Source: Lepidodermella squamata (Eukaryota > Animalia > Gastrotricha). From it: DNA of 64,000 bases. The stretch covers positions 2,108,001-2,172,000 of the forward strand of contig JBLDXI010000015.1 in NCBI GenBank assembly GCA_047495785.1, given 5' to 3'. Shown here one piece after another: positions 10,090 through 61,241 of the stretch. The notes beneath the pieces were generated by a model. It was not told the DNA's origin. It searched no databases and saw only the letters and a program-made list of their open reading frames with translations. Numbering within the stretch: position 1 is the first letter of the stretch; every line of letters starts with the position of its first letter. Position numbers and translations under genes: made by a program.

Positions 10090-11310
10090 ATGAACTCTCC
10101 ATCTGAGAGCAAGTACTTTGTCCTTCGGGGCGGCGATGAATTCGACGACGATTTCGAGAGCGGCAAGATGGCTTTGCAGCTCAAGCAATGCGGCCTGCCA
10201 GCGGCGATTGTCGATGCTGTTTTCTCGAAGGAAGTCAAGGCGTCTTCCGCCTTCCTGCCCATCGCGTCTGGCCTCCTCGAAGTCTTCGGCGACTACCAAC
10301 TTCGCGAGCAGACCCTCTCCCAAATGGTCACCGAGGTCAAACTGGAGCGTGACAGCCTTCGCAACCAGCTTCGGCAGGCCAGTCAAAAGCAGCGTACCAT
10401 CCTCGCCGAATTCCAGGACTTCAGATCTAACGCAGAGCGGCAGCGGCAAGAGAAGGACGAAGAAATCACCAAGCTGAAGAATGCCCTGACAATGCTGTCG
10501 AAACAAGTCGCGTCAATCGCCGCCAACAACGACAAGGCCATTCAATCGATCGGCCGCGTCTCAGACCTGGAGAACCAACTCAAATCATCGCAGACGCTGA
10601 TCGAAGAACTGAAGGCGGCTCTCGAGCAAGAGAAGGCCAATGCGGTCGCGCTTCAGGTGAAATACGATGCGAAGCGAACGTATTTCGAGACCTTCGCGAA
10701 GCAAGTCGAGGAGGCGAGCAATGCGAAGAAGGCAACGATCAAGAACCTCACGGCCGAGATCGAGAAGCTTCGAGCCGAAAATTCTGCCTCCCGGCTGTGC
10801 GGCAGTCCAGCGAAACGGCCGAGGTTGCCAGGTAAAATAACTCGTAAATTTTTTAGCAGGCATTTTTATTTTTTTTATTTGAAAGAAAAACCGTCCGAGC
10901 CTGTGATGGATCCCGAGGAAATGAAGCAGCTGAATACGACGATCAATACCCTTGTGAGCGAACTTTCAAAGCGAGGCGAAATGATTCGTAGATTGGAGGA
11001 AGAGGTGGCTCGACTTCGATCTGACCTCAAAGTAAACACCGCAACGCCAAATTTTCACAGAAAAAATCACGACATACTTTTGTTTTAGAAGCCCGTCAAT
11101 AATCCTCAGCAATCGAATTCAGAGGAATCGTCCAAGCTCGCCGAGGTTAAGCAATTAATTGCTCTACGGCTTGAGCTCGAAAAGCGCTTGATGCGCCAGA
11201 ATTCTGCCGGGTTAAAGGAAACTGAAGAGCACGTTTTCTTACAGGCATTATTGGATCAACTCGACATTTGGACCGCCAGTCACACCTCGCTGAAATCGCC
11301 GCAAACTTGA
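10090..11310 (+). CDS. CC1: coiled-coil protein, divergent first member of array; exons 10090-10831, 10886-11031, 11089-11310
   Basis: Long heptad-rich ORF; canonical introns give an in-frame product ending ...LKSPQT*. Weak version of the family N-domain (LKQCGLPAAIVD); NLS-like SPAKRPRL. Confidence 0.8.
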
Positions 11311-14300
11311 CGCCAATTTATTGTAGATTTATTGTAATAAGTGTTACTCCGCTCAACTGCATTTAGAGTGATTGATTTTTTTTGTATAAAGTCGAATATT
11401 TTTTTATAAACTATTTTATGCCACTGAACCACCGATGAAAATTAAATTGAAAAGAAAGAATGATGTTGGGAATAAAATCAAAATCGCTGGCGCTGCGAGC
11501 GACCTAATTTTGGACAAAAATGACCTTTTTGAACTAATGACTTTTGCGGTCGCGCCGGCGCGTGATTATTAGAGGAACACGCAGATCAGGTTGTTCCATT
11601 CGAGCGAAAGAAATCGCCGTCTGCTGCTCAAATTTCTAAAATCTCCAAGTTTTAAAATAGACACCGGGAGTGTTTGATTAGTCACTCGGTATAGACAGCG
11701 TGGCATGAATAAGCGTATGAGTCGGTGCGAATTATTCAGCCGGATGAGAGTATCAAAATTTAATTTGCCGCTATTTACAGCAGTATGAATCAGAGATAAT
11801 GTTTCAAAGTGGCGTGCTTTTTTCAAAAAATACTTTAACAGCAGAAGAAGAAGCAGATTTCGTGATTCAACATGAATGACTTCGCTTATTTTAGGAACGT
11901 ACCGAAATTTAATAACCCTTATTAGAGGAGAAAATTATAAAATTGTTGGGATATGTTTCAACCAAAAAATTCTCAATCATGATCAGTCGTAAAATTATGT
12001 GCCTTTTTACCTATATCCCTAATTATTTATTTTATGTAATGTTACCTCGAAGGTTAAACATTCGAATATCAAAATATCTGCGATTGATATTGAAATTTAA
12101 AGCGAACCTCCATTAAATTTTCGAATTTCATAAACTTTTCTTAAAAATCAAAATATGAGAGCGATGGCTAAGATTGGCACAGGTGATTCCTAACAAAAAA
12201 TCACGGCGATTGAGATGATTCTCGAGAGAAGCAATGAATCAAAATACGAAAATCGCCTATATGTCTACTCATCTAAAATAGTGAAACCATCATTAGTTTA
12301 ATGCTTCTCAAAATCAGACGAGATTTAGCTCTTTCGATGATTATTTAGAAAATTAGAATAGTTTGTTGAAAGATGTGCAAGGTGGAATTATGCGAATTAT
12401 TTTTGGGACAAAAAGCTTGATTGAGGTGTTTTCGAATTTAAGCGAATTTAATTTAATGGCAATTTTCTTGACAGTTTTTAAGCCTGCCCATGATTCATTT
12501 TGTGACTTCAATTGTGGTCGCGTGTTCATTTGGCATTCTTTCAAATTGCCACACCGTTGCTATTGCGCAATTTTTGTTATCAATTATTTGTGAAAAAAAC
12601 GTGACGCAAGAGGCGACCTCGTTTGTTCATGCTTTTTCAGCTTTACTTTTACTTCATTTTTTGACCTTTTTCTCTCAGAGCTCAGAGTGGTTGACTCAAT
12701 ATTCGACATAATGGTTTCGTTTGCTTATTCGTGGTCGTAAAAACGCTTCCAGGAAATCGATTCCAAGCGCGCACGAAGTGCACTGACCAGTCTAGAATGA
12801 TTGTTTTCCCGACAATAATGCGTCTTCCGGTGCGGCAAATTTTTATTGCAAATTTTTGCGCTACTGCTCGTATGTACAACACACAATCAAGGAATGCCGA
12901 TGATGACGGTGCACTCGCGCCTTTTCCGCTGCACGCTGCGGCCGCCAGTACCACTAAAATTCACTACCAGCCGTGGCGACATCGATTTCAACTATTGATG
13001 CGCTGTTTTCTATGGCATCGCGCGCTTGTTATCTATCCACTGTGCAATAAATTGGTTGCCAATCAATGGTACCTGCTGAATCATCATTCATGACAATTTG
13101 CCAATTTGTTAAGCCCATTTAATGATGACGACTACGTCTTTCATTGCGAGGATTTTTATTACCAGACCATGTGCGCAGATTTATTACTACTACCAGTGAC
13201 CCGAGGTCATAAGGCGTGTTTCTAGTGGCGAAATTATTGCTTAACCAGCCCTTATGAAACACGTGCGTCGTGTTTATTCGTCGTTTTCTTCCTCTTGATT
13301 TGTGTGTGTAATGTGTGGCATGCTCAAGTCAGCAGCTAATTTTAGCGATCAGCAAAACCGCAATTTTGCTTCGCTACAACAGATAATCAGGTGCAGCGTG
13401 CGCGTCGTGACGAAAATTAATCAAGCCAGTTTCACTCTCGCCTGTCGTAATTCGAACTACTTTTCATCATTTCATCATCATCATCGTCGTCGTCGTTAGC
13501 TGGTCAATAGAGCAGCATCTTCATTTCCTGTGTTTTCTTGCAACTCACCTTTAACGAAATTAAGATCGATTTTCAGCCCCCGCGATTGTTTGTTGCCTTG
13601 TTCTCACTTTAGCTTTTAGATCAGAGACGCAGCCTCAGTGCGTTTTTCAGCTCGCGCACGCGATCTGTGCCATTTTGCGCAACACGTGCTGCTGCTGCTG
13701 CTGCTGTCCAAAAACAACTCGCAAACAACAATAATGAAAAGTCCTGCTTAACAATCTACACTAGCCCGCCAAAAATTATTCCCTGATAAGATAAAACTCC
13801 ACGTTTGTCAGCTAAATGATCTTTTTATCGACAGATTTTTATCTGTGAAACACCACCTACGCGGCCTGCTTGGGTGTTGTTTGCATGAGTGGCCATCTCA
13901 ACCAGTCATAAAATCGCGTCATGGACTTTGTGCTTGGTGAAAACACGCCCGTTTTTTGTTAATTATTTTATGTTACGACCAGCTGAAGTTTTTTTAATCG
14001 CAGTTCTTGTTTCATGAACGACTGGGCGAGGCAGAAACACACACGTCCATTTGGTATTAGTACTCCCGCTCTATTCATCTAGGAACAATATAAAGTAGCA
14101 TAGAATATTCCCATAGAGACACAAATGCCGCGCTGCATTCAATATTTAAGTAAAATGCGGCGCCTCTTGGGTTTCTTTCCTCGTGCATGTCAATGCAAAT
14201 TTTCTTGCATTCATGAACTGGAAAAAATTGAGAATTTTGCCTTCTTTTTCTTCTAGTAGGCCTCAAGATTTTATCATACGTCATGCATTGTTAATTTTTT

Positions 14301-14333
14301 AACTAATATCGCCGCCTTTTGCATCATCGGAAA

Positions 14334-16202
14334 ATGAGCGTTGTTCAGCCGCCGCGGAAAAGGAAATGTTTCCTGTTGAAAAGTGGCGAGGTCGCCCCGG
14401 ATTCCCCGAGTTGCAGCGTCGAATCGGCGCCTGGCACGCCCCTCCCGCCAGCCCCGACGCCGCCGCCTCAAAGTAATTTGCCGCCGAAGCAGATCTCGCT
14501 GCCGGCTGACGAGGCGTTCGCTGCGTTCGTTCAAACCGCGCTCGAGTTGGCGTCGAAAAAAATCGACAAGGAACGCGCGTTGACGTTGCAACGCGACGCT
14601 TTACAGCTGAAGCTATCGCAGGCTGAGGAAAAATTGCGCCATTTTCAGATGCAAATCAGTGCACTAATGGCGAGCCCGTCGCCGTCGTTGTCGCCGAAAT
14701 CAGCCTCGCCGACGTCGACGACAACCATCGAGGAGCCAGTTGTTACTACTAATAAGCAGGAATCGTCGAAACTGGAACAGAAAAATCGCGAATTACAGCG
14801 TAACCTCGATTTAGTTCAGCGTGATTTAACGCAGTGTTCTAATTTACTGAAGAGTGCTCAATTCGACTGTTCGAAGAAGGACCAAAGATTAACCGATTAT
14901 TGCAAGGAGCTAGAAAAATTACGGGCTGAGCTGACGCAGACGCGCTCGCGATTAGACTCATTTGTTAAATCAGCGTCTGAACAGGCGATTTTGGCGAAAA
15001 ATTTACAGGAAGAGTTGAATGTGGAGAAAAGCGCGAGGCTGGACGTTGAAAGCAAGCTTCGAACTGCGAATGAGTGCGTTCGAGCCGGCATGCAATTAGA
15101 CGCTATGCTAGTTTCAATAACGGCGGAGAAGAACGAACTTGAGGCCGAGGTGGCTAGGCTGAAATCATCAGGTTCAACTTGTGCTACGAAAGCATCGTCA
15201 GCCTCGGAACAAACGACTCAGACCGATGAAGTTATTGCGAAGGAACGTTTCATCAAGAGGGATGAAGAGATCTCACGACTTCAGGACAAAATCGTCGGCC
15301 TTCACCGTCAATCACCGCTGGAGATCACCGGTCAAGATAGCCTCGCCTCGAAAAACACTTGTACGGAAAATTCGAATTTTTTTTAAGGAGGGTTTTTTAT
15401 TTTAATTTTTTCAGCGTCAGATTCGTCAACTGATTCTCCATCGCAGTTGCAATCGGAGAATGTGAGTTTGAAGCGACGGGTGGCCGAGTTGGAGGATGAG
15501 CTTCAACAACGGACCGAAACGATGGAGTGGCATCAGCGAACGTGGAATCAGAAGTGTGAGCAGTTGCGACTGCTCGAAGAACGGGTTCGCGATCGTGACA
15601 TTCAATGTGCCAAATATCACTATGAACTCGAGGTTTGTTTCAGAAAGCATAACACGCGTTTTAATGAGAAAAAAGTAGAACGCGCAAATAATCAATATTT
15701 TATCGAATATTCCAATTAGTCTCGGATTTTTTTCGAAAGACGAGCATTACGCTATGCTTTTTATCGCTCTTCCATGCAATTAATTATCTTTTGTTTTATC
15801 GTCTTGTTGATAAACGGACTCGATGTCTGACAATGGAAAAGTTGTTATACTTGCGTGGGTTACTAATTACTAGAATCTCCCGCCCGATAAAGCAATGTTT
15901 ATTATTCGCTTTTATTCAAGATATCGAAGTCCGGAAAGTACAACATGAGTGCTTTTGTGGAGCATTTTAAGCCGAGTAAATTGCCAAAATTAATTGATGA
16001 TATAATTATTGATTTTTGAATTTTATTTGTTTTATGAATTTTTTTTAATTATTTTTAGCTGGCTGAGCGGAAATTGCGATCATACCAGGAGCGCATGTCA
16101 ATCTCGTCGACATCATCCTCGCCAAGTTTGATGCACCAACACCACGACCGGGTGATCTGCGACCCCGTTCACCATCACTACCCGTCGCTAAGCGAATTTT
16201 GA
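14334..16202 (+). CDS. CC2: coiled-coil protein with Pro/Ser-rich N-terminus; exons 14334-15360, 15415-15632, 16059-16202
   Basis: AAAATG start; in-frame splicing at GT-AG sites; NLS-like PPRKRK. KCFLLKSGE resembles CC1 KYFVLRGGD. Confidence 0.8.
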
Positions 16203-16479: not shown

Positions 16480-19400
16480 ATGATCGATTTAACTGAGGAA
16501 GATTCAGATTATCGGCAGAAAATGTTAGAAGCCGACATTCCGTTGAACATTATTGCAGAATGCGAATCGCGGCCGATTTTAGCCGAAATGTTGATTGTTT
16601 ACGCTAAGTCGCGTAAATCTTACGAAAATGAGTTGTTATCACTCGTCATCGACGTGAAAAAACGCGCTGAAAAGAAGCGATTTGAATGCGACAAGGAGAT
16701 GAGCCGCTGCGAAAATTACGTCCTCTCATCCCAAAATTCTGAAATCGAAGCCGATAAGCTGCGTCGGCAAATCGCGGATATGAAGGCGCACATCGAGACG
16801 CTCAGTTCCGATTTACTCGCGCGCAACTCGGAACTCGCCGATTTGGCGGGCGATAATCGCAAGTTGGCGGAGGATAAAGCCAAGGCTGAGGCGATGTCAC
16901 GCCGGCTTAAAGTCTCGTTGACGCAAACTGCAAGGGACCTGGCGGCTTTGCGGAGAAATGATTCGATCAGGGCGAAGACGCTGGCTCGCAGTGCTAAAAT
17001 GAGTCACTCGTTATGCCGTAGAAGGCTATGTAAGTTTCGGTAAATTTTCGGGTCCAAAGTCCAGCTTAATTTTGATTAATTCGAGATGCGAAATCTTCCT
17101 ATAATGGAAAGTTGAATCATTGAATGAAAAAGTTTAAAGTTGGGTTAAATATTCTGGAAAGTTCAAGGACATTTTTGTTAAAAGGCTTCCTGATATCTAA
17201 TACAGCTTGTCCCAGAAGTTGCCCGGCAAATTTTTTAAGAAAATTCAACTATTTTTGTTAAATTAAACCTACCGAGAGAAAACTCAAATTTTTACCCATG
17301 ATTTAACCGAAGAAATAAAAAATTTATCGGAGAATACCCGGAAACCGGAAAACCCCGATTGCAACCGGTTCGGTAATTGTCGGTATTTTACCCGGTTGGA
17401 ATCCCATTAACAATAAGTAACATTCTTGATTACTATGTTCGTTATTTTCGAATTTTTCTAAACTTTTACTTGCCATGAGATGTGACGTCTCTCATTTTTA
17501 GTTCATTTGAAGTTTCTGAACCATTTTCCGTGTATTTTCTGTGCTTGCATTATTTATGGGACACGCTGTGTTAGAATTGTTTTTACTTCAGTTAGTGCAG
17601 AGGTTGGTTCAGAATACGCAGACCCGATCCAACCCAAAAAGTGACCGAGGGACCGAATGAAGTAACCCTATATGACAGTAACCCACCTATCATTTTTATT
17701 TTTATTCCTTTTCATTGGACGTTTTTAAAAAAAAACACAACCGTGAACATGGTCGGATTAACCCTCCGGCTGCCCCTGGGCTTTTGGCGTTTGGCGGCCC
17801 CATTTTTTTGCAAATTTCAAGAAAAAACGAAAAAAAAATTATTTTTAATTTGACTTAAATGGGAGGTTAGAAAAACGTTTAGAAACGCTTCTTTCGACGT
17901 TTTCTGTCGACGAAAATGTCAATAATACGCTCAACATCCAATGACCTTAATATGTCGGATTCCAAGGCCAGAATCATTGGATTGTTCAGCTCGTCCTGGC
18001 CCGTCGATGATCTGAGATCGCCCTTAATTAAGGCCAATTTAGAGAAGCTGCATTCACCGCTCAATCCTCATTGATAGCTGAAAGGGCCTTTCGAAAAACT
18101 TTCGACGCTGGCGGCCCCTTTTGACTGGCTCCAGCCCTCCGAGCCAACGCGTTAATCCGGCCCTCTCTGTGAAGCAGTCATTTTATGTAAAAGACAAGTT
18201 CATTTCTTGAGACCTTGTCGGGCATCTTGTGCAACAAGAACCTCCGATTCAAAAGTTACTGGGTTCATTCCAGCCCGGTCTTTTCGGACAACTTTCCCTG
18301 CTAAAGAGAAGTGGCGTTCTGATTCGGATGGACACCCTTGAATAACGAGTAGTTAGTTACGCGGCAATTCGACTGGTTACAGGAAACAATCCGCTGTTTT
18401 TGCCCCGCCACTTTAGAGGGTAAAAAATGTCGCCTTCTGGAATTTCCACATCTAGCGCTTTGAATTTGACCAACTCAGAGTCGTAGTTTTGAGATTTTTA
18501 TTTACAGGATGAAAAACAAAAAGATGTTCATTCAGGTGTCCTAGAGTAACTTGGGCAATAACGTTGTCAAAGTTGAGCTTCCATTATTTCGTTAAGAACG
18601 TTGAACGAGGGCAGATCGCAGTTACCCAGAATGCGGATTGGTGTCTTTTAGGGCAGTGGCGAGCTTGGAAACAGAAGGCGCTTTCTTGACCGTCATCGAG
18701 TTCATCTTGAGTTTCGTCGAGCACGGGTAGATAATTGCCATTGCTAGGCATCATTTCGGTTGGTAGAACTTCCTAGAATAAATTACCGCATCGTTGCCAA
18801 CTTTTCAAGATTTTGGCACGTTCTGCTTGAAGCTGATCTCAAGCGTGAGAGCAAGAATACTGTCAACGATTTGATGATGCTTTCTCGGCCACGTTTTCCT
18901 GATCTTTTTCCTACGCCTTCATAAATTGCTCCGTATGGTAGCCATGGTGCCGAGGTAATTAGCCATGCCCCACCTCGGAGGCATCTTTTGGCGTCGGGAA
19001 ATTGGTGATCGCAGAGACTTCAGCAGGATCGGTAGAGATAGGGCCATTGCGACCCAGAATTCGCCCTAGAAATCGCACGGAGTAACAAAAGAGATTTGTC
19101 TTTTTATGATGTAACTTCAAACCGGATTTCCTGAGACGATTCAAAACCTCGCGACGGACCTGAATGTGTTTCTCGAAAGTCCTCGCGAAGATGTGAAGAT
19201 GTGACTTCGCCCTTGATCAAGTTAGGAATTACGTCGCGCTGAGCTCTGTTTAGCTCAACGGTGCCGAAAAACTCTGATTGAAAAATACATCGACTCCTAG
19301 TTTTATGAAGATTTAATATAATTCTTACCAAATCAGAACAGCTAATTTCTAAAATCATTATTTTTTCATCTTTATAGCAACTCAAGACGCCAAATATACC

Positions 19401-22400
19401 AGACTAAACTCGAAATTACAGCAAGAAATCAAAGAAATAACCCGCGACCGAGATTCTTGGCAACAAAAAGCTACATCGATACAGCGGAAATGTACCGGGT
19501 GCCGCGGGCTGAAAGAGCGCCTCGAAAAAGCCGAATTCGAAATCGATGTGAAAGATCGCATTGTTGAATCTCTGAAAATCGATCTCCGCCTCGCTGAAGA
19601 ATCGTCTACCGCTCATGATAGTAACCATTTTCGACCCATTTTTTTAAGTTGTTTTAATTTTCTCTTTTCCAGACGAAATTTGTGACCTTCGAACTAAACT
19701 AGCCTTGGAGGCGACAACTTCGGACAGAATCAAGTCTGAATTTCTGGCGAAAATTGAATTGATATCTCAGGAGCGAGATTCTCTACGATTCAGAATCGAT
19801 TCGATGAGTGCCGTCCAGTCTGACAGTGGGGCGCCTATATTCTGCCTCGACTGCCCTATCATCAAGTCTCGCCTTGAAGAGGCTAAACAGGTGAAATTCG
19901 GCAAAGTTTAAAAACAATTTTTTTCTAAATTTTTCTGATTTTAGAAATTGGCTGATCTTTCATCTGGAATTCAACCTCATCAAATCGATAGCGATGAAGT
20001 TTCGAAGCTGAAACAGGCCCTTGAAGACAAAAAATCTGAATTGGTTGAAGTCGAAAATAAATTAAATCAGATCATCTCCCAAAAACAGGACCTGGAATCC
20101 TGTTTATCCAGAGCTGAGTCCACAATTCGATCGAAGGACCTGGAAATTTCTGTCATGAAGAAGGCCTACGACCAGAAAAGGGCTGAATTAGCTGGTAAAC
20201 TCGAAGAGCTGGAGGGTAAATTAGAAAAATTCTTCAACCAACGAGAGGCGATGGTTAAGAAATTGGCAGATGCTGAAATTTTGATTGAGAAATTGCAAAA
20301 TTGCGGAAATTGTGGAACTCTGAACCAGCAACTTGATGATTGCAGAAGGTTATGTGATTCCATGAAAGGCGTCGTCAAAATGCTCAGTGAAAGGCTGGTC
20401 CAAAACGATTCATTGCTTCAAGAAAAATCTAGTAACAAACCTCAAAGATTCTCCATTTTTTGTTTTAATTTTTTTATTTGAAGGCAAACTGGCGGAACTT
20501 CAACAGCAATATACTGCGCTTCAGTCGAGCAGCTCTGAAAATTTGAGGTCGGAGATCGATAGTTTGAGGGAAAAGCTTCTTGATTGTGAAAATCTGATCA
20601 ATACAAAAGCTGGTAACATTTTTCTAATTATTCAATCAAAATCTTCAACGAAATGTATCAGCTGAATTTTCCGATCTTCAAAATCGTTTTGATGCTCTCA
20701 ATGCGAGACCTGCTAACTGCGAAAAGTGCGAGAATCTGAGTTCGCAGGTTGAAAAATTGAAGATAACTGAAGGTGTGGTTGACAAATTTGCCCAAAAAAA
20801 TAATCTGATTTCATTTTTGTATTCAAGAGAAAGTCGCCGATTTACAGTCCGCAAACAAAGCTCTTGCCGATGCTAAAACTGAGCTTGAGAAGGAACGAAA
20901 TGGTACTATTCAAACTCTGAAGGACAAAATCGCAGAAATGGAGGCTTCGGCCGAAAGTTGCGCGAAATTGCGGTTGGAAATCGATCGATTGAATGAAAAG
21001 CTGATTGCTCGTGATAACCTCGTCAACACCAAAACTGGTAACTATTTTGTCGGCATTTGGTCGACTTTGATTTGTTGGATTGCCCTAGCTGAATTGCTGG
21101 GGCTTCAAAATCGATTCGATGCACTCAATGCGAGACCTGCTAATTGTGAAAATTGCCATTACCTTCGCATGACAGTTGAAAATTTGAAGAAATCAGTCGC
21201 TGATTTGGAGGAATCTCTCGCCCAATCGAAGTCCGAAAAAGTAGCAGTGGACAAAGAGCTGGAATCTGCCGTAAAATTGTGCGGAGAGAAAGAGGCGGCG
21301 TATCTTTCAATGCGTGAAAAACTCGTCAATTGTCAACGTCTTTTCGAAGCTGAAGAAGGTAGGTAGAAAAGTTTCCAGGGAATCAGCTGAATTTCCCCAT
21401 TTTTCTAGAAAAAGTTGCCGATTTAAAATCTGCAAACGAAGCTCTTTCTGAAGCGAAATCAGAGCTGGAAAAGGATATGAATAGTACTGTTCAATCGCTG
21501 AAGCATAAAATCGCGGAAATCGAGGTTTCGCTGGCGGCCAAATCTGGTAAAAATTGCTTTTTTCCCCATCAATTATACGCTAATTACTTAATGATTCTCA
21601 GATGAAATCGAATCGTTGGTTGAAAGCCACAATAAATCATTCGAAAAATTCAAGCGGAAGAATGGAAGTCTCAAGAAATTGTTGTCTAAATTGACGGCGA
21701 AAAAGGCGAAACTGGAGCAGCAGATTGATCGCGCTCAGAAGATCTGCGAAAAGCGAGAATCGGCCAAAATTTCACTGCGAGCCAAACTGCTTTCCGCATT
21801 GAAAACTCGCCTGAAAACTGAATCAGGTATCATTTTTATCGCCTAAAAAAAGTTTATTTTATTTTCTCTGATTTACTAGTTCTTCATGACACTCTTCTCG
21901 CTGAGAAATCGGAAATGGCTGAGCAATTGCAGGAATCGGTGAAAATTACCGAAAAATTGAAAGAAAGAAATAGGACTCTGAAACAGCGAATTGTTGAACT
22001 GAAGTCCGATCTCGAGGCGAAAACAAGTAAATTAACAAAATTAATCGTAAATAAAACGATATATTATTACGTTTACAGATGAAATAACAGATCTTCAGGC
22101 GCGAGCCGAAAATCAACCCTGTGAAGATTGTGATCAGCTGCGCAATCAAGTATCGCAGTTGGTAAAATTGGCTCGCGATCGGAAAAAGCAGCTCAATAAT
22201 TTGGAAGCGGTAAAGGCGAAGCTCGACGAGAGAATTGGTAACTTAATTGCGATCACAACTTGTTAAGGTTTTCATTCTGATTTTTTTCAGTGGAACTGGA
22301 ATCGCAGGTCGAAGCGGCAAAATCTCAACCTGTCAGTTGCACAAATTGTGAAGCGCTTTATGCTACCATCGAAAAATTGGAAAAATCGAACGCGAAACAT

Positions 22401-22850
22401 AAGGAACGCTTCAATGAAATTGTTTCAGATAAAGCTCAAGCCGATGAGCTAATTGGTAAGTGGGAATTCGAAGTTAAAAATTTGAGAAAACGTTGATTTT
22501 TTCAGAAAAATTGAGAATAAAAAAAGCCGCCTTAATTCAAAAGCTGAAAAATTCGAAGCGAAAATATATAGAAAGTTCGTGCACGGAATGTGTTGGATTT
22601 CAAAGTGAAATCGCCCGACTCCAGGCCGAATCTGAGTCCGTGTATAATTCTCTGAGGCGGAAGTTGGAAAAAATAGAGGTAAAATTCGCGAAAAATGATA
22701 TTTGTCCACCTGAAATTTTTTTCTTAGAAATTGAAAGCGAAAGTGTCCAAGCTCAAAGACTCAGCATCCTATGATGGAGTTTGCAGTGAAGAAATTTCGC
22801 CGAAGAGTGGGAAGCGGCGGAGACTGGTGGAGCGGAAAAACAACGAGTAA
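16480..22850 (+). CDS. CC3: ~1115-aa, 15-exon coiled-coil protein with eight CxxC motifs
   Basis: Exons 16480-17029, 19378-19620, 19673-19890, 19945-20431, 20484-20612, 20662-20772, 20828-21037, 21089-21358, 21409-21546, 21602-21826, 21880-22026, 22079-22237, 22291-22455, 22506-22678 and 22728-22850 splice in frame (3348 nt). Family N-domain present; C-terminal SPKSGKRRRL. Confidence 0.8.
17265..17534 (+). repeat. Dispersed repeat (MITE-like end), second copy at 51352-51626
   Basis: Colinear similarity between the copies: ...cggtattttacccgg..., cttgattactat, gccatgagatgtgac, gtttctgaacc(a/c)ttttccgtgta. Confidence 0.7.
17748..18165. mobile_element. Non-autonomous TIR element (hAT-like MITE)
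   Basis: Ends catggtcggattaac ... gttaatccggccctc; degenerate 8-bp flanks accgtgaa / tctgtgaa. Confidence 0.55.
18205..18530 (-). mobile_element. hAT transposase remnant (C-terminal dimerisation domain), frameshifted
   Basis: Minus strand encodes ...PLKWRGKNSGLFP... and ...IQGCPSESERHFSLAGKVVRKDRAGMNP..., matching the hATC SERxFSxAG motif. Confidence 0.75.
18959..19205 (-). mobile_element. Ty3/Gypsy reverse transcriptase fragment
   Basis: LNRLRKSGLKLHHKKTNLFCYSVRFLGRILGRNGPISTDPAEVSAITNFPTPKDASEV is typical of the Gypsy RT C-terminal/thumb segment. Confidence 0.85.
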
Positions 22851-23024: not shown

Positions 23025-26000
23025 ATGGCGGATGAATCATTGATGAGAGAGATTGAAGAGCAGCGGAGGCTGACCTTGAAGCGGAAAATGGTCGAATGGG
23101 ACTTGCCATTAGAGGTCGTTTTATTCTGCGAATCTTCCCCCTCAGCCGCAACCGCCTTAATCAATCATATTTCGGGGTTAAGAACTTACCAGGAAGATTT
23201 ATTGGCCCTGTTAGCGAATATGAAGCGGAAATACGAAGCCGAGAATATGACTGTTCTAGCGGAAATTCACCGATTGACCGAACAGTTGAAGAATGAGGAT
23301 CTTCGAAGCCAAGATGAGATCGAAAATTTAAAGTCAGAAATCGAATCTCGTAACGAAATGATTGATCAACTCAATAAAAGAGTCGACGATTTATTTATCG
23401 ATTTGGAGTGCAAAGATGCCGAAATTGACCAGTGGAGAGTTGATTTCGAAGTTCTATCCGAAAACAAAACCAATATCGATGCGGCTTTATTGCGATGTCA
23501 GCGGGCTGTGGTAGATTTACAGCTAAAGTTGGAAAATGAAAAGCGATCGAAAATTGCGTTTGCTCGCAGATTGCGTTCAAATTTCAGATGCAGGGTTGCA
23601 AAAATCGAATTGTATGTTAACTTTATTCCAATGAGTAATTTAGTTCTATTTTAAATCAATTTCAGAAGACGAACACGCGAGTATGAAGTAGGCCTTGGAA
23701 AGTTATGTTATCACCTTTCGGTTCTTCAAGAGGAAAATCAGTCCTTACGTTTGAGAAATGAGTGTCTTGAAGATGAAAAGTCCAAGCGAATTCCGAAATC
23801 GGTAGTCAGATCAAAAGACGGTATGTTACTATGGATTTCCAATTTCAAAATAATCAAGTATTGTAATTTTAGTATTGATTGCGCAGCTGAAAGTTGAACG
23901 AAAAAAGGAGCGAAAGAAATTCGCGCGAATTAAGGCAGAATTATGTGCGAAAATCGATCGATTGAGCAGTGACCTGTCAATTTTGGAGTCGGCAGCCGCG
24001 TTGAAGGCTGAACCTCATCCTCCTGTTTGCAATAACTGTTCCACCTTGAGGAACGACCTGGGTCAACATTGCAGGGGTGGAGAAGAACAAGTTTTGAATG
24101 AAGCCGTCCGCAGTTAGCTTTGTAGTAACGAAACCAACTTTTTGCTCGCTAGTTCGAGGAAGTCGTGTAACCTGTTCGTTTCGTGCGTTTTAGCTGGGTT
24201 CAATAGCTGAGTGAACAGCTGGTGGAATATCCGAGGTACGATTTCGAAAGTCCCGTCGACAAAAATTCGATCAGCGGCTTCAAGCCGAGCCGAAAATCGC
24301 CGCTGCGTCGCCATTATCGGCAAAATCGATGTCGATCAAAAACTCTTTGCTATCCAAAGTTTTGATGAACCGGCCGTTCAAACTCTTCGCTGTAGCGTGC
24401 TCCATACTAGACATGAAGTCGGGTTCGTTTGCCTCGAACGCGGTACAAGATGCTTTGAACAGCGGGATATTTCGGGTCCATTTGTTCTTAAATTAAGTGA
24501 CGAACGCTCCGTGCACTCACAAGCCGGGTCCGTCGGAAGACTGAGCCCTAAAGCTAAGCAAGAGATACAACAACAACCCTGTCGAACGCCGGTTAGCTAA
24601 CGGTGAGCTAACTTCTTAGTCACCAGTGGTGATGTCACGGTGACTATGATATTGGGCGAACCAGTAGCTTACGGGAATGTCACCGGTGACAGAGTTTGAT
24701 CTTAGATGAGACTATGTTAGGTATAAATCACATGTCATTTGTCGAAGTCAGATCACAGATAAGACTATAAGGTATAAATCACATCAAGTCACATATTAGT
24801 CTCGATATGCAGTGTCAAATTCCAACTACTTGTTGCTGGGTCGGTCGCGATAGTGGGGCTGGTCGGGTTGGTGGGTGTGATTTTTTTCCCACTATATTAA
24901 TCAATTGATAGAATCGCGTGCTGCCAAGCCCCATTGATCCCATTGATGCTATCATATCGACCATCAGAGCAACACGTAGTTGGACTTCGACTCCGCAAAA
25001 TCTGGCCTAAGATGCAGATGTCAGATAAGAATGTAAGGTATGAATCTCAAGTCTGATGTCAGATAGGACTACAAGGAGGTAAAAATCACATGTCATCATC
25101 GCCATCATCAGGCGACTTGATCATAGAAACGTGGAAAGTGTCGTCATCGCTTGAATGATCGGACTCCCCGCTGGCCACTCAGCCGCTTTGCGACCTCGAC
25201 CGCGAAACGGGTGTGCGACATCTTGACCGACATCTTGGCAACCCGACAATTTGACCCAAGACATTTTGTAACATATATTATTATCGGAATACTTGGGTCA
25301 AGATGTCGATGAGGGCAGTGTGTCTTAGGTCAATATGTCTTTGGGTCGAAATGTTACGTTAGGCCAGGACGTCTTGGGTAAAAATGACGCTATCCCCGCG
25401 AAACGTAGGCGAAACGTAGCAGAACAAATCTGAAAAAATTTCTACATTTTTGACGCACGAATTTGTTTTTTATTTCATCCTGAGTATAGCAAAACTGAAA
25501 ACTGAATAGCTTGTTATGGATAGTAGTGAACGCGTTTGTATCTCCATTCATTACTTACTTTTTGCCATAGTATGTACGAATTGCCGAAATGGCGTACATA
25601 TTTATGTACGAATAGCCATTCCGATTAAAGTTTTCCTTTTTTATTTCCATTTTCTAGATAAAATTGTGCGGCTTGAAACTGCTGTTCTATCGAAAAATGC
25701 CGTAATTGGCGAATTTGAAGCTCAGCGTGATTCGATGGAGGCTGAAAGAAATGAATTTTCCAGTGAGTTTTATTATGCTATTCTTATCAATGTCTATATC
25801 GCTAGTAATTTTGTCAGATTTTCGACCTCAGTCGTTAAAATACTTCCTCTATTTTAGTTTTATTCTGCAGAACACTCATTTTACAGAAATCAAAATTGAC
25901 TGGAGAAGTGTAGAATGGATTATGAAAGCAAAATATTCAGAGGCTGAAATTAATGAAAATTAAGGCGGATTTTTCATCTTTTTATTTATTTTTCATTTCT

Positions 26001-26392
26001 GATTGCACTGTGCTAGTAAATACCTATTGTCGTCAGATTTTGGGCGATTTTTATCGAAAAGCTCTCACGATTGAAATTATTAAACTTTTGGTGTAGGAAA
26101 AGTGTCAGATCTGCAGCAGAAGATTGCTGATCAAGAGTCGATTAATGAAGCACAGCGAAAAGCGGTCGACGATCTGCAAGCGGAAAATCGACGCCTTGTT
26201 GCTGTTTTACAAGACGCTGGTCATCGAATCCAGCGAGATATAGCAACTGCTCTTCACAACAACTCATCAAGTCAGCAAAACGATGCGCCAGTTCATTCGA
26301 CACCAAACAATCCTCAAATTGGAAATTTGAGTGCTGAGCTGGCATGGCTGCAAAGCAGTCGACGATTGCGGCTCAATTTTATCAAGAAGTGA
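23025..26392 (+). CDS. CC4: coiled-coil family member; exons 23025-23611, 23666-23820, 23873-24061, 25658-25762, 26097-26392
   Basis: Family N-domain; exon structure parallels CC5; one CxxC (CNNC). The exon 3 donor (gtcaac) is weak and abuts a MULE fragment. Confidence 0.7.
24114..24570 (-). mobile_element. Mutator/MULE transposase fragment
   Basis: RIFVDGTFEIVPRIFHQLFT matches the MULE DGTFxxxPxxFxQLFT motif around the first catalytic Asp. Confidence 0.8.
25209..25396. mobile_element. Small foldback MITE with target-site duplication
   Basis: GGG...CCC ends; internal GACATCTTGACC-like repeats inverted between the arms; direct repeat cgcgaaac at 25201-25208 and 25397-25404. Confidence 0.8.
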
Positions 26393-54333: not shown

Positions 54334-55611
54334 ATGACTGACGATAAAACTCAGCTGCGAAATGAAATAAATCTGATATCACTCGATTTACCGCCTGATT
54401 TGATGATCCTCATTGATACGTCCGACGTCGCCTTGGTGACCGCGCTGGTTAGCTTCATCGAAGAGAAAAATTCTTATCAAAGTCAACTAACCGAATCGCT
54501 GATCGCCTCCAAAGAAAAGGTCGAGGCGAGTCGAAGAATCATTGAAAAGCTTGTAGCGGACCTTAAATTAGCCGAAAATTCGATCGCGTCATTCAAATCA
54601 ATCCTGGAGCAGAAAGAAACAAAGATTAAATCGCTATTGGCTGAAATCGAATGTTTAACTCGGCAAAACGAATCGCAGTTGTCTCAAATCACTTTGAAAA
54701 ACGACATTATTTCCGATCAATTAACCAAACTCGCAAACTTATCGAAACAAGCTGAAAAACGCCGTAAAATCGATACTTCGATTGATTTAAATTCGGAATT
54801 GGTAGAAAAAATCGCATCTCTTGAGGTAGCTAACGACAGTCTTGAGCAGGATATCGCCGCCTCTCAGAAGAGAATTTCCGAGTTGGAACAGACCATAGCT
54901 ACTCAGCATCAAGTGTTTCATCGAATTTCATCCGAAGTGGAACGGCAGGCTGAGTTATTGACTGCAAAAGATGGCCAATTAGCGGCTTCGTTGCAGGATA
55001 AAGCGATTCTGGCTGGTCAGTTCAATCAATTGAAAGAGGAAAATTACGAGAAAAATCGGCTGATTTCAAAGCTGACCGACGACATAACGATATGGAAAAC
55101 GAAAAATAAAACTCTATTCGACCATGCCAGCGATTTGGAACAAGAGCTGAAACGCGTTGTGGCTATCAATTTCAGCGTCGCTGAAAATTGCCCAGAAAAA
55201 TCGCAACGTTTTAAGGCAAAACTGAAAGAAACGAAACGCGAGCTCAGGTCTAGCAATAGAGAACTGAGAAAAACTCGCTGTGAGCTGGCTGAATTTAAAC
55301 GAAATTTCGATAGATTGATGCATGAAGTTGCAATGAAAGATTCGATAATTGCTCAGATTGAACAAAGTCTGCTGTCTGTTGATGAAAAATGGAAGAAAAA
55401 TTGTGTTGACTTGATGTCGGAATCTCACCGTCTTGTTGATGAGTTGAAAGGCCAAGTTGCAGAAAAGGAAAAAATTACTGCTGATTTGAATTTTCGAATT
55501 TATGGGCTCAATTCGACAGTAGCCCGATTGCGAATGGAATTGAGCCGAACGGCTGAAGCGCTGATGGCCACGTCTTTTAATCGGCAAGGATCTAACAATA
55601 ATTACTGGTAA
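54334..55611 (+). CDS. CC13: ~425-aa member; recent duplicate of CC14
   Basis: Family N-domain; KRRK NLS-like motif; terminal intron 55608-55667 overlaps the last codons. Confidence 0.9.
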   Translation: MTDDKTQLRNEINLISLDLPPDLMILIDTSDVALVTALVSFIEEKNSYQSQLTESLIASKEKVEASRRIIEKLVADLKLAENSIASFKSILEQKETKIKSLLAEIECLTRQNESQLSQITLKNDIISDQLTKLANLSKQAEKRRKIDTSIDLNSELVEKIASLEVANDSLEQDIAASQKRISELEQTIATQHQVFHRISSEVERQAELLTAKDGQLAASLQDKAILAGQFNQLKEENYEKNRLISKLTDDITIWKTKNKTLFDHASDLEQELKRVVAINFSVAENCPEKSQRFKAKLKETKRELRSSNRELRKTRCELAEFKRNFDRLMHEVAMKDSIIAQIEQSLLSVDEKWKKNCVDLMSESHRLVDELKGQVAEKEKITADLNFRIYGLNSTVARLRMELSRTAEALMATSFNRQGSNNNYW

Positions 55612-56135
55612 ATTTTTTTGAAAATTTATAAAATTTATAATTTATGAAATTGTATTTTATTTTACAGATTGACATAGCTCTGGACCTTGCTGATAAACAA
55701 TTGACTGATATTAATATTTTTTGCTCTAATTTTTCATTCCAAACTCGTTGTCTTGTATGATTTTTCCAAACTCGATGAAATGGTTGTTATTGGTTATTTT
55801 TCATCCAATGGGATCTTTTTAATTGTTTTTAGGCTAATTTATTCAATTAATTTCAAACCTCCAGAGAGCTTTGAACCCGATGACTTTTGCTGGTTTGACG
55901 AGCGCATTTCGCCAAGTGGAACTAGCACCGTTTCGCCCACAGCATTTAGTCATTATTAGGACGTGATAAGAAACTCGCTGACCCGATTATCAGGTCGACC
56001 CGGCGAATTGCCCGGTGGCATCCAGGGATAGGAATCATTTGAAAATGTATATAAAATATGTTGATGATGCTAATTCATTATTTTTTTAATTATTTAATTT
56101 GTGCATCATTTTAGTCTGCAGCTTTAATAATATTG

Positions 56136-56657: not shown

Positions 56658-56743
56658 GACATTAGAAAACGGGAACTTCTTCGAAAACTTCACCCCAAAT
56701 TTAAAAAAAAATCCATTTTTTAGGTGGGTTTTTTTACGTTAAA

Positions 56744-57988
56744 ATGACTGACGATAAAACTCAGCTGCGAAATGAAATTAATCTGAGATCACTCGATTTG
56801 CCGCCTGATTTGATGTGCCTCATCGATACTTCCGACGGCGCCTTGGTAACCGCGTTGTTCCGTTTCATCGAAGAGAAAAATGCCTACCAAAGTCAACTAA
56901 CCAAAGCGCTGATTGCCTCTAAAGAAAAAGCCGAGGCGAGCGGAAAAATCATTGAAAAGCTCGTGACGGATCTGAAATCAGCCGAAAATTCGAACGCGTC
57001 ATTTAAATCAATTTTGGAGCAGAAAGAAACAAAGATTAAATCGCTATTGGCTGAAATGGAATGTTTAACTCGGCAAAACGAATCGCAGTTGTCTCAAATC
57101 GCTTCGAGGAATGAAATTATTTCCGATCAATTGACCAAAATCGAAAATTTATCGCAACAAGTTGGAAAACGCCGTAAAATTGAAACGTCGATGGATTTGA
57201 ACTCGGAATTGGTAGAGAAAATCGCATCACTTGAGGTAGATAACGACAATCTCGAACATGCGATTGCTTCATCTCAGAAGAAAATTAGCGATATGGAAAA
57301 AACAATTGCCACTCAGCATCAAGTTTACGAGCGAATTTCAAGCGTAGTGGAAATGCAGGCTGAATTATTGAGTGCGAAAGATGACCAATTATCGGCTTCG
57401 TTGCAGGAAAATGCGATTATGGCTGGTCAAATTTCGAAATTGACCGACGAAATAACGATATGGGAAACGAAAAATAAAACTCTGTTCGACCACGCCAACG
57501 ATTTGGAACGCGAGCTGAGACGCGTTGTGGCGATCAATTTCAGCGTCGCGGAAAATGTACCACAAAAATCGCTGCGTTTCAAGGCGAAACTGAAGGAAAC
57601 GAAACGCGAGCTCAGTTCCAGAAACAAAGAACTGAGAAAAATCCGCAAGGAGCACGCTGATTTAAAACAAAATTTCGATAGCTTGAAGCATCAAATTGAG
57701 GTGAAAGATTTGTTAATCGCTCAGATTGAACGCAGCCTGCTGTCTAAGGATAAAAAATGGGGGAAAACGTGTGATGACTTGATTAGCAAGCTGTTTGAAT
57801 CTCGCCGTCTCGTTGATGAATTGAAAAGCCATGTTGCGAAAAGAGAAACAAATATTGCTGATTTGAATTTTCGAATTTTGGGCCTCAATTCGACTATAGC
57901 CGGGCTGCGAATGGACTTGAGCCGAACGTCTGGGGCGCTACTTGCCACGTCTTTTAATTTGCAACAATCCAACAAAAATTACTGGTAA
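56744..57988 (+). CDS. CC14: ~414-aa member; recent duplicate of CC13
   Basis: Colinear and highly similar to CC13, with a 14-aa deletion and a small insertion; same terminal intron. Confidence 0.9.
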   Translation: MTDDKTQLRNEINLRSLDLPPDLMCLIDTSDGALVTALFRFIEEKNAYQSQLTKALIASKEKAEASGKIIEKLVTDLKSAENSNASFKSILEQKETKIKSLLAEMECLTRQNESQLSQIASRNEIISDQLTKIENLSQQVGKRRKIETSMDLNSELVEKIASLEVDNDNLEHAIASSQKKISDMEKTIATQHQVYERISSVVEMQAELLSAKDDQLSASLQENAIMAGQISKLTDEITIWETKNKTLFDHANDLERELRRVVAINFSVAENVPQKSLRFKAKLKETKRELSSRNKELRKIRKEHADLKQNFDSLKHQIEVKDLLIAQIERSLLSKDKKWGKTCDDLISKLFESRRLVDELKSHVAKRETNIADLNFRILGLNSTIAGLRMDLSRTSGALLATSFNLQQSNKNYW

Positions 57989-58239
57989 GAATTTTTCAAA
58001 GGTTTAGAAATATTTTTAAAATTTTTAATTGCGATAATTTTTCAATTAAATATTTTTATTTTTCAGATTTTCGAAAATCCGGACCTTGCTGACCAGACTG
58101 ATAATAATATTATTTGCTCTAATTTTTCGAGCTCGCTATCTTGCATGATTTTTTCCAAACTTTATGAAGTGATTGTTATTGGTTATTTTTGATCGGATAG
58201 GATCTTTTTAATTGTTTTTAGGCCATAATTTATTACGAA

Positions 58240-59417
58240 ATGATTGAAGATTTTCGAATCCAAAATTTGAACAAGCTTAAATCGCTGAATTTGCCAGCGG
58301 AATGGGTCAACATTATCAAACTGAATGATTCAGCCCTCGTCAACATGCTGGTTTCTTACGTTACAGAAAGGAATAACTACCAAAGCCAACTCGAAAATGC
58401 TCTCCTCTATACCAGGGCTACTCTCGAGAAAACTCGCGACTTGTTGGAAAATATGAAATCGAGTCAAGATTCAGAAATTGCGGAGAAAGATATGAAAATC
58501 CGATCCCTTTCCTCGCAAATAAACTGGGAACGGGAGAATTTTCAATCTCAATTATTAGCCAAAGATCGAATAATTTCCGAGCAAAAATCAAAAATTGAAA
58601 TATCGGCCGCTGAATTTCGTGAAACTTCTAGCAATCTTCTGGCGAAAATTACTTCCCTCGAATCGGAAAATATCGAAATGGAAAAGGAAATCAGCCGCCT
58701 TAATAGTCGAATTGCAGAGTTGGACAGCAAATCGGCGGCTCAAAATGAAGTTTTTCGCCGAATTTCGCAAGAATTTGAGCGATTATCCGTTGTTATTAAA
58801 GAACAGGACGAGCAAATTGACGCGTTATCGGCTGAAAAATTTGCGTTGAAAAACCAAAGCTATGAATTTGGTCGGCAACTGGCCGAAAAAAATCAGCAAA
58901 TTTCGGATTTGAGTGCTGAAATAGGAAAATTAAAGGCGAAAACAATTGGTTCTCAGGTTAAGAAAGTTGTCCCATTGCTACAGAGGATCGAATCGTTGGA
59001 AAAAGAACTGAAACACAGCGTCTCCAGCGCTAAATTACAGGAAAAAATCAAGCGATTGGAGCTGAAATTGAAAAATTTAGTAATCAAATCGAGAAAGCTG
59101 GAAAGTACGAATAAAGATCTTAAGAAGTCTGGAGATGAGCAGGAATTGAAAATTGCCAGCTTTTATCAAAGTAGCAACCGGCTGCAGGGCCAGATTGGCG
59201 AGCTGAACGGACGGCTAGCTGCGCAAATCAGCTATTATGAGCGGATTATTTCGGATTTGAAGTCGAATAATGGCTCGATGCAGGTCGAAATCGGCAAGTT
59301 GAGGGTGATGTTGATGCAGTGCCAACAGCAATTGATGCGATTTACTTCAGCCCAGAATGGTAAATTTTTTAATTCTTCGGAAATTTTTATTTTATCATTT
59401 TTTTAGGTCGCTGGTGA
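58240..59417 (+). CDS. CC15: member; exons 58240-59359, 59407-59417
   Basis: Family N-domain; phase-1 intron 59360-59406 gives the C-terminus QNGRW*. Confidence 0.85.
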
Positions 59418-59765: not shown

Positions 59766-60685
59766 ATGGCGACCTTAATGCAACTAGATTTGCCAGTTTA
59801 TTTAAGGAAGCAAATCGATGAATCGAACCTGGAATTGGTTGATGCTTTAACGGCTTATGTTGAAACGCGGAATCGATTCGAATCCGATCTTACCAGTTTA
59901 CTCATTTCCACAAAAGCACGTCACAAGAAAGATGTCGAGCATATGCGGTGCTTGAACGAGGAGAAAAATTCGCAAATCGAAGCGATGAAATCGAAAATGC
60001 GAGATTTATCAAATGAAAACAGCCGCCTTAATGAGAAATTATCGGAATTGGAACGGTTTATTACGAGGAGGAATGCGGAAATGGATGAGGTGAGGCGAGA
60101 AAAATTCGAACTGGAAAATCGAATAGCGAATAATTCTGCCGAGCAAGTTGAAATCGATGTATTGAACTTGGATATCGAATCGTTGAAGAAATGCCGTGAG
60201 GAAGATCGCGCTAAATTCGCCGCTGAATGCGAAAAACTGCGAATAGTCATCAAAGACTTGAAAGTTCAAGTTAAAAATCGTGAAAATTCTATGATGGAAT
60301 TATCGCTAGAAAAGAAGGAATTGTCGAAAAAATTTCGGGATGAGAATGACAAGTTGAAGAAAGAAGTTGAAAACTTGAAGAAATTCAACGATCTTCGAGA
60401 GATGGTATCTCAAATTGAGGCTTTGAAAGAAATCAACGACCAGCAAGCCGATGAAATCAAACGAATGCGAGCTGCGTATTTCAACGAGCGCGTCAAAGCG
60501 GAAAAATCCAGGACGGAAATTCGGAAATTGGAAATCAAAAATAGCGGTAAAAATGGAAATTTTTGGGATTTTTTATTTTAATTTTCAATTTTTCAGATCT
60601 TACTCATGAAATCGTTTCTCTACGCTCTCGTTTATCTTTATGCGTCAACAAGCTGAGGCGATTTCTCCGTCAACCTCAAAATTAG
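59766..60685 (+). CDS. CC16: member; exons 59766-60547, 60597-60685
   Basis: LMQLDLPVYLRKQIDESNLELVDALTAYVETRNRFESDL; phase-1 intron gives DLTHEIVSLRSRLSLCVNKLRRFLRQPQN*. Confidence 0.8.
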
Positions 60686-60849
60686 AACGAATTCTTATCA
60701 TCTCGAAATTATTTTTTGTTGAAAATTCCTGTGCGTAATTCTTGTCGATTTTCGAACTGAACAAATACAACCTTATTTATGAAATCATATCAGTAAATTT
60801 ACGTGTTTTAACGAAGTGAGTTTTCATATTTTTTTAGATCTAGCTGTAA

Positions 60850-61241
60850 ATGCAGAATTTTAATGAAAAACTGTTGAAATCTGCCGATTTACCCGCGGAA
60901 TTGATTTCAAGCATCGATTTTCGAATTCGAAACTAGTACGGGCCGTTTTGGACTTTGCTTCGGGCAAAAAGCAGTTCGAAAAGGAATTGATCGGCCTATT
61001 GGTCCATCGGAAGCGGAAGATTGAAAGCCTCGAGGGTGAATTGTCGGAAATGAGGGCAAAATTGCGGCTATTTGAGGCGCAAAAGCACCAAATCGTGCTT
61101 TTGAATGAACAGCTGAGCCGGGCTCTTGATGACGCCGCCGATGCTAAGCAGGCCTTGCTGGAGCAGAAAGCTACTTTGTTATCCTATGTCGCTGCCAAGA
61201 AGAGTAGGCCTGATCTCGGAAATTTTCACACTGGAGCATAG
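60850..61241 (+). pseudogene. CC17: shortest, last member; 1-nt frameshift in a T run near 60918
   Basis: MQNFNEKLLKSADLPAELISSIDF continues as SNSKLVRAVLDFASGKKQFEKEL only if one T is added to gattttcg; pseudogene or homopolymer error. Confidence 0.7.

What the first reader, a model, noticed from the sequence alone, without database searches (positions are those of the whole stretch)
10090..61241. Tandem array of 17 co-oriented coiled-coil genes sharing an unrecognised ~55-aa N-terminal domain
Seen: CC3-CC17 all begin with the same motif. Examples are CC7 LRKLKSLDLPPHLLTLIDPTNFIFVSALCAYVEDRNRYENELTDALLAAKRKI, CC9 LQRLKSLDLPTDLYHLIDPSDAALVDSLFHYVIDRNAYESQLKHALIQAKESL, CC11 RRKLQSLDLPAELIDSLNLSNVALIDALIAYVLDRNRYDIQL and CC16 LMQLDLPVYLRKQIDESNLELVDALTAYVETRNRFESDL. 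CC1 has a weak version, and CC2 links to CC1 only through a short motif. The domain is followed by coiled coils that make proteins of ~130 to ~1115 aa and differ strongly between members. I do not recognise the domain. Inference: a lineage-specific system with a constant head and variable rod. It could supply combinatorial subunits of a nuclear filament or scaffold (lamina-, synaptonemal- or kinetochore-like), length-variant adaptors, or factors in a genetic conflict.
Basis: partly seen in the sequence, partly recalled or inferred. Interest (0 to 1): 0.9.

Follow-up and report, generated by a model that had tools for sequence, protein, structure and literature searches.

The report
Orphan coiled-coil rod gene array
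A tiny freshwater animal, very probably the gastrotrich Lepidodermella squamata, has 15 neighbouring related genes for long rod-shaped proteins that start with a small helical cap matching no known family; the family is real, and the members tested are expressed and conserved, but its job is still inferred.

Summary
The array is real. CC3-CC17 share a ~55-aa head. CC1 is a marginal member and CC2 is not one. CC5 and CC17 are frameshifted. No significant match was found in Pfam, PDB, PHROGs, ESM Atlas or fold searches; among 1.84 billion proteins there was one true relative. "Constant head, variable rod" is only half right: the rods of CC7-CC15 are homologous and share a second box and a GCN4-type C-terminal zipper. 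The two closest pairs are under purifying selection (dN/dS 0.29-0.35). cDNA contigs cover CC14-CC17 (plus one CC13-specific piece) and show one splice junction. Short gaps and splice acceptors just before the start codons suggest operon-like expression. The predicted head (two short helices capping a long one) resembles helix-loop-helix-zipper geometry only weakly and fails the bHLH motif; lamin/IF, SYCP1 and UBA tests were also negative. Best reading: a lineage-restricted, birth-and-death family of intracellular parallel coiled-coil dimers acting as scaffolds or spacers (0.45). Rivals are pals-like regulators, synaptonemal proteins and filaments. The scan noted similar-sounding arrays 1 kb and 82 kb beyond this window; I could not check them.

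The parts
10090..11310 (+). CC1, 369-aa coiled-coil gene (3-exon model); marginal, longer-loop version of the head
14334..16202 (+). CC2, ~462-aa coiled-coil gene (last exon uncertain); no head, not a family member by test
16480..22850 (+). CC3, 1115 aa, 15 exons, 12 of 14 introns phase 1, first intron 2348 nt; eight CxxC-capped coil units; duplicated exons 6/8/12/13 and 7/9; basic C-terminal NLS-like motif
23025..26392 (+). CC4; head exon 23025-23611; stops at 24117 (328 aa) if read through; tail exons 25660-25764 and 26099-26392 lie beyond a ~1.5-kb repeat-rich insert (full model uncertain)
26525..32235 (+). CC5, recent duplicate of CC4 with internal ~180-nt repeats; two-base frameshift near 27185; last exon 31974-32235 beyond a 3.9-kb gap holding inverted-repeat elements; probable pseudogene
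32379..33005 (+). CC6, 208 aa, single coding exon, C-terminal KRPR
34530..35393 (+). CC7, 287 aa, single coding exon; head + box 2 + zipper
35611..36705 (+). CC8, up to 364 aa (possible 3' intron from 36653)
41712..42800 (+). CC9, 362 aa, single coding exon
46257..47378 (+). CC10, 373 aa
48380..49297 (+). CC11, 305 aa
49575..51146 (+). CC12, 523 aa, longest of the single-exon subgroup
54334..55668 (+). CC13, 424 aa; stop codon split by a 60-nt intron
56744..58067 (+). CC14, 413 aa, 74% identical to CC13; intron 57985-58066 splits the stop codon; spliced form seen in cDNA
58240..59417 (+). CC15, 376 aa; cDNA contigs present
59766..60685 (+). CC16, 289 aa; cDNA contigs present; rod not detectably related to CC7-CC15
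60850..61241 (+). CC17; head broken by a one-base frameshift near 60920 that also stands in the DNA run's contig at full depth; probable pseudogene

Best explanation
A taxon-restricted gene family grown by local tandem duplication (birth and death) that encodes intracellular, parallel two-chain coiled-coil rods used as structural scaffolds, spacers or tethers. Shown or computed: shared head, coiled-coil rods, no strongly hydrophobic 19-residue stretch apart from a borderline one in CC13, selection on the protein in two pairs, transcription of the members tested, neighbours more alike than distant members. Inferred: the head (two short helices packing on the start of the first long helix) caps and registers the dimer and offers a conserved binding surface; the C-terminal GCN4-type zipper with its core asparagine closes the other end in parallel; the middle sets the length (about 20-65 nm for CC6-CC15 at 0.15 nm per residue, up to ~150 nm for CC3); CxxC pairs in CC3 and CC4 share a zinc between the two chains and act as hinges, as in CtIP; genes co-transcribed in operon-like runs are made in the same cells, so they could form homo- and heterodimers.
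For: Head in 15 genes, mean identity 29%. AlphaFold pLDDT 88-90 with helices 2-16, 21-26, 32-47. Heptad coverage 70-93% in the intact CC3-CC16 models. The C-terminal box's best PDB match is GCN4 (E 8e-4), with many bZIP and designed dimeric zippers below it. dN/dS 0.35 (95% 0.24-0.46; head 0.16) for CC13/14 and 0.29 (0.17-0.48) for CC4/5. Identity falls with distance along the array (Mantel rho -0.44, p 3e-4). cDNA depth follows coding exons and shows a splice junction. Nine of 16 gaps are 132-348 nt, and 15 of 17 starts have an acceptor within 80 nt upstream against 14% of other ATGs and 35% of AT-rich ones. CtIP precedent: PMC8205527.
Against: No dimer could be modelled and no partner, location or phenotype is known. 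A structural role is the default for long coiled coils, not a result. Core scaffolds usually persist across animals, whereas this family has one known outside relative and two broken copies. Zinc binding and trans-splicing were not shown for these genes. Expression was tested only over 55500-61450.
Confidence: 0.45

Rival explanations
1. Pals-like regulators: helical paralogues in clusters and operons that bind and antagonise each other to switch an immune or stress programme.
For: Same genomic behaviour as C. elegans pals: species-specific expansion, clustering, operon, divergent shared signature (10.1101/2023.01.15.524171). Turnover with two broken copies. An unchecked scan note places an NLR-like gene 20 kb beyond the window (s1-411554).
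Against: PALS-16/20 models have four-helix bundles at both ends, not a 200-1000-residue rod. No excess of amino-acid change. No infection data.
Confidence: 0.2
2. Meiotic or germline chromosome structure (synaptonemal- or kinetochore-like subunits) specific to this lineage.
For: Such proteins are divergent coiled coils (PMC8598163). NLS-like motifs in CC3, CC6, CC10, CC13, CC14. An 8-residue identity between the CC5 tail exon and human SYCP1 (E 0.65; Pfam SCP-1 E 0.08 for the CC4 tail).
Against: The SYCP1 match is not significant and lies at the wrong end of the rod. Box 2 finds no SYCP1. SC proteins keep length and coil layout between orthologues, while head-to-zipper distance here runs 131-459 aa between paralogues. 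No NLS-like motif in CC9 or CC15.
Confidence: 0.12
3. Highly diverged lamin- or intermediate-filament-derived subunits that co-assemble into filaments.
For: Head-rod-end-box layout; Y-to-end-box spacing of 224-361 aa in most of CC7-CC15 brackets IF rods (IF figures from my own knowledge). Weak Pfam Filament hits (best E 1e-5, below cutoff).
Against: Neither the first-helix box nor the end box retrieves a listed IF chain from PDB. Filament hits map to mid-rod only. Rod length is not fixed. No lamin tail domain.
Confidence: 0.1
4. Degenerate basic-less HLH-zipper proteins acting as dominant-negative partners of transcription factors.
For: bHLH chains fill 12 of the top 36 and 10 of the top 50 structural rows. 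N-termini are mostly acidic or neutral rather than basic.
Against: Z below 6, inside the noise range for helical models. No Pfam HLH hit and no HLH cluster in the Atlas.
Confidence: 0.06
5. Stress-protective gel- or fibre-forming proteins of resting eggs, analogous to tardigrade CAHS (analogy from my own knowledge, not tested).
For: Lineage-specific multi-copy helical proteins in an animal with resistant eggs (own knowledge).
Against: Regular hydrophobic heptads and little disorder; no sequence match.
Confidence: 0.05
6. Domesticated transposon or virus accessory ORFs.
For: Many single-exon members; inverted-repeat debris in the long gaps.
Against: No transposase, RT or ORF1 domain in the members or in ten other ORFs scanned; PHROGs and viral folds blank.
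Confidence: 0.03

Closest known systems
C. elegans pals family (ALS2CR12 signature)
   Same: Lineage-specific expansion, tandem clusters, operon co-expression, divergent helical intracellular proteins.
   Different: No sequence link found; PALS models are helical bundles joined by one helix and have a mammalian orthologue; this family is long rods with one known outside relative.
bHLH-zipper / Id proteins
   Same: Helix-loop-helix running into a zipper in the predicted head.
   Different: Motif test failed; extra short helix in the loop; rod many times longer than a zipper.
GCN4-type leucine zipper
   Same: C-terminal box has the heptad pattern with core Asn.
   Different: Generic motif; no basic DNA-binding region before it.
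CtIP N-terminal coiled coil with C89xxC92 zinc hinge (PMC8205527)
   Same: CxxC interrupting a coiled coil, as eight times in CC3 and once in CC4.
   Different: No sequence match; repeated by exon duplication; zinc untested.
SYCP1 / nematode SYP proteins
   Same: Divergent coiled coils; one 8-residue identity.
   Different: Not significant, wrong position, variable length.
Lamins and cytoplasmic intermediate filaments
   Same: Head-rod-end-box layout of similar size in CC7-CC15.
   Different: End motifs not retrieved, no fixed segment lengths, no tail domain.

Membership tests
bHLH / HLH-zipper | At most 9 mismatches to the 19-site Atchley motif | tested here: not met
   11-14 mismatches, as in shuffles
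bHLH / HLH-zipper | Pfam HLH match | tested here: not met
   none of 14 heads, E up to 10
bHLH / HLH-zipper | Helix-loop-helix fold | tested here: inconclusive
   enriched among rows but Z under 6
bHLH / HLH-zipper | Four-helix dimer core | not testable with these tools
   only monomers can be folded here
Intermediate filament / lamin | Coil 1A and coil 2B end consensus motifs | tested here: not met
   head and end-box profiles retrieve no listed IF chain
Intermediate filament / lamin | Fixed rod length | tested here: not met
   131-459 aa between anchors
Intermediate filament / lamin | Pfam Filament above cutoff; lamin tail domain | tested here: not met
   best 25 bits against cutoff 40; no tail domain
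SYCP1 / synaptonemal proteins | SCP-1 N-terminal conserved motif at the rod start | tested here: not met
   box 2 finds none; tail exon E 0.65 and 0.08
SYCP1 / synaptonemal proteins | Meiosis-specific expression and central-region location | not testable with these tools
   only one unstaged cDNA run
UBA/CUE bundle | Compact three-helix UBA fold or Pfam match | tested here: not met
   no UBA chain in the top 50 for the head-only model; no Pfam hit
PALS (ALS2CR12) | ALS2CR12 signature | not testable with these tools
   no profile of this signature was on hand; no named homologue was returned
PALS (ALS2CR12) | Clustered, operonic, lineage-expanded paralogues | tested here: met
   clustering and expansion shown; operon inferred
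Transposon accessory ORF (LINE ORF1, cargo gene) | ORF1/RRM/esterase domain or location inside an element | tested here: not met
CtIP/Rad50-type zinc hinge | CxxC within a coiled coil | tested here: met
   nine units
CtIP/Rad50-type zinc hinge | Sequence relationship to CtIP or Rad50 hook | tested here: not met
   PDB search E up to 10 lists neither
CtIP/Rad50-type zinc hinge | One zinc shared by two chains | not testable with these tools
   needs protein

The most novel reading that the evidence does not exclude
The array encodes a gastrotrich-specific filament or chromosome-scaffold system, invented independently of lamins, IFs and SYCP1. Co-transcribed subunits would pair through a new HLH-like capping head and a terminal zipper to build rods of graded length, with CC3 as a zinc-hinged, exon-extended long member.
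Probability: 0.12. Interest if true: 0.8.

Novelty: new variant of a known kind. Interest (0 to 1): 0.42.

Why it matters
Gastrotrichs have almost no molecular cell biology. This gives a defined family with a new small domain, a clear modular layout and a testable pairing rule. If it proves to be a filament or meiotic scaffold, it would be an independent invention of a core structure in an animal that switches between parthenogenesis and a sperm-making phase (own knowledge). If it is pals-like, it would be a second case of operon-encoded antagonistic paralogues. As it stands it is one of many orphan tandem families in this genome, with no shown function.

Tried and rejected
Sequence searches: Pfam on 19 ORFs and on heads, box 2 and exons gave coiled-coil noise only; one hit passed a cutoff, TMF_DNA_bd in CC12's mid-rod, which I read as generic. 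The weak Bacillus_HBL hits are the same noise and not a toxin. The 5.8-billion-protein search was blank for the CC9 head and for the whole-rod alignment. Exact look-up of ten ORFs was blank. P0002 and P0003 (E 4e-4, 6e-4) are repeat proteins matching only part of the head, rejected. PDB by sequence gave only a PRD regulator at E 0.009 over 28 residues. Host identification through the neighbouring receptor gene failed. bHLH, UBA, IF/lamin and SYCP1 resemblances recalled from memory were each tested and not met. An automatic exon finder over-extended the models, so I set them by hand. Allelic differences could not be used: 6 of 10 changed CC14 codons equal the CC13 base, so cross-mapping is likely; CC16 showed 3 replacement and 4 silent codons in a truncated list. 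In one search I entered CC17's start as 60863; the correct ATG is 60850 (acceptor 12 nt upstream, gap 164 nt).
Full report
Observation. The + strand holds 17 coiled-coil genes between 10090 and 61241. A profile built from 14 N-termini finds those 14 and one more, CC17, split over two frames; nothing else in six frames scores credibly. Only one proline is invariant, and mean pairwise identity over the first ~75 columns is 29% (range 12-83%). CC2 has no head and CC1 is missed by the full profile. CC1 aligns colinearly, with an 8-residue longer loop, to the CC3-CC6 subgroup, just above all shuffles and decoys, so it is a possible distant member. Hand-curated models give 208-523 aa for CC6-CC16 and 1115 aa without internal stop for CC3. 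CC5 has a two-base frameshift near 27185 and CC17 a one-base frameshift near 60920. A heptad score covers 59-93% of each intact model, far above shuffles and controls. No model has a strongly hydrophobic 19-residue stretch; the highest is 1.88, in CC13.

Host. Run labels are coded, so this is inference. The scan index lists 147 pieces and 1993 windows. The published Lepidodermella squamata assembly has 157 contigs, 122 Mb, 43% GC and 83x coverage, in a study whose other library is C. elegans at 96x and 102 Mb (PMC11660948). Run X1 holds the window at depth ~80. Its study-mate X3 has 101 million letters, contig depths mostly of 60-130 and none of the window's words. That fits closely. X1 is therefore probably the source sample and not independent support. 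Other scan notes reach the same host (unchecked).

Real genes. dN/dS is 0.35 for CC13/CC14 (bootstrap 0.24-0.46; head 0.16, rod 0.38) and 0.29 for CC4/CC5. Over 55500-61450, run X2 has depth on the coding parts of CC14, CC15, CC16 and the CC17 region and little or none on the spacer sequence apart from a repeat at 56097-56693. A loose end at 58066 joins to the upstream exon, showing the CC14 intron spliced, with the stop codon split across it. Another loose end carries CC13-specific sequence. A third ends in what I recognise from memory as a SMART cDNA primer and is absent from the window, so X2 is cDNA. The CC17 frameshift lies inside an X1 contig with no gap at full depth, so it is not a consensus slip; whether X2 shares it could not be read.

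Architecture. AlphaFold gives the head two short helices followed by a long one that is already the first coil (pLDDT 88-90). CC7-CC15 also share box 2 about 60-90 residues further on and a C-terminal zipper box. Their rods align above heptad-block shuffles (mostly z 3-20), whereas the rods of CC3, CC4, CC6 and CC16 do not join that group. There are thus a largely single-exon subgroup and a multi-exon subgroup (CC3-CC5). CC3 grew by duplicating phase-1 exons, and eight units are capped by CxxC. Head identity falls with distance along the array (rho -0.44, p 3e-4), and the starred clades are neighbours, CC3-4-5, CC4/5 and CC13/14: stepwise tandem duplication. The long gaps hold inverted-repeat debris. 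Nine of 16 gaps are 132-348 nt, and 15 of 17 start codons have a T-rich acceptor within 80 nt upstream, mostly 7-31 nt, against 14% of other ATGs and 35% of AT-rich ones. This is the pattern of operons resolved by trans-splicing, which other notes report for this genome (unchecked). 5' UTR introns are not excluded.

Relatives. Among 1.84 billion representatives the head profile found one credible protein, P0001 (E 6e-7; hhalign 97%). It is 338 aa, coiled-coil, carries a box-2-like stretch, and comes from a 1-kb contig of run SRR31012058, whose organism I could not identify. All other sequence, profile, language-model and fold searches were blank or generic. These libraries evidently lack this animal's proteins, since even its receptor gene found nothing at E 1e-20. 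The blank therefore shows no close known family, not absence from its phylum.

Comparison with known families. Structural rows are enriched in bHLH-zipper chains, but Z stays under 6, and the Atchley motif fails at shuffle level. No UBA chain is listed. The end box matches GCN4/bZIP zippers, not IF coil 2B, and rod length is not fixed. An 8-residue identity with SYCP1 in the CC5 tail is not significant and lies at the wrong end. The CxxC units match nothing but have a functional precedent in CtIP's shared-zinc hinge. In genomic behaviour the closest analogue is the C. elegans pals family, without a sequence link.

Mechanism. Shown or computed: family, selection in two pairs, transcription of the members tested, coiled-coil rods, tandem growth and decay. 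Inferred: parallel dimers capped by the head and closed by the zipper, length set by the middle, zinc hinges in CC3 and CC4, co-expression allowing mixed dimers, and a scaffold or spacer role (0.45). Rivals: pals-like regulators 0.2, meiotic scaffold 0.12, IF-derived filament 0.1, HLH inhibitor 0.06, stress gel 0.05, transposon origin 0.03. Nuclear location is only suggested for some members, by NLS-like motifs in CC3, CC6, CC10, CC13 and CC14 and none in CC9 or CC15; such basic motifs are common in coiled coils.

Verdict. This is a real, selected orphan family with a new small head domain, expressed where tested. It is a new variant of a familiar kind, the lineage-restricted tandem coiled-coil family. 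No mechanism is shown, and the more striking readings were tested and not supported, so interest is 0.42 rather than 0.9.

Noticed in passing
window:569-2992 (-): Intronless 807-aa ORF with an ANF-receptor ligand-binding domain but no Pfam hit in its C-terminal half; no homologue at E 1e-20.
   Followed up: partly
window:6185-7174 (+): Glutathione peroxidase gene with N- and C-terminal extensions.
   Followed up: no
window:7897-9183 (+): Single-exon 428-aa orphan ORF, no significant Pfam match, not coiled coil.
   Followed up: no
window:5171-5242 (-) and 7460-7531 (+): Two tRNA genes.
   Followed up: no
window:55608-55667 and 57985-58066: In CC13 and CC14 an intron splits the stop codon (TG|A); the spliced form is in cDNA for CC14.
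   Followed up: yes
window:31978-32145: The CC5 tail exon shares eight consecutive residues with human SYCP1's N-terminal coil; E 0.65, probably chance.
   Followed up: yes
window:29585-30371 and 38677-38978: Nested or long inverted repeats of MITE type inside the array; a related repeat occurs at 17232-17534 and 51320-51626.
   Followed up: partly
window:37399-41110: Several diverged copies of a 60-320-nt unit between CC8 and CC9, unexplained.
   Followed up: no
window:25570-25593 and near 31490: A possible ~22-nt CxxC-coding micro-exon in the CC4 tail and a decayed copy in the CC5 tail.
   Followed up: partly
window:10090-10140 and 14334-14400: CC1 and CC2 share only a short K-x-F-x-L-x-x-G-x-E-like stretch near their N-termini.
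   Followed up: partly
L001:5-1021: P0001, the only outside relative, on a 1-kb contig of run SRR31012058 of unknown organism.
   Followed up: partly
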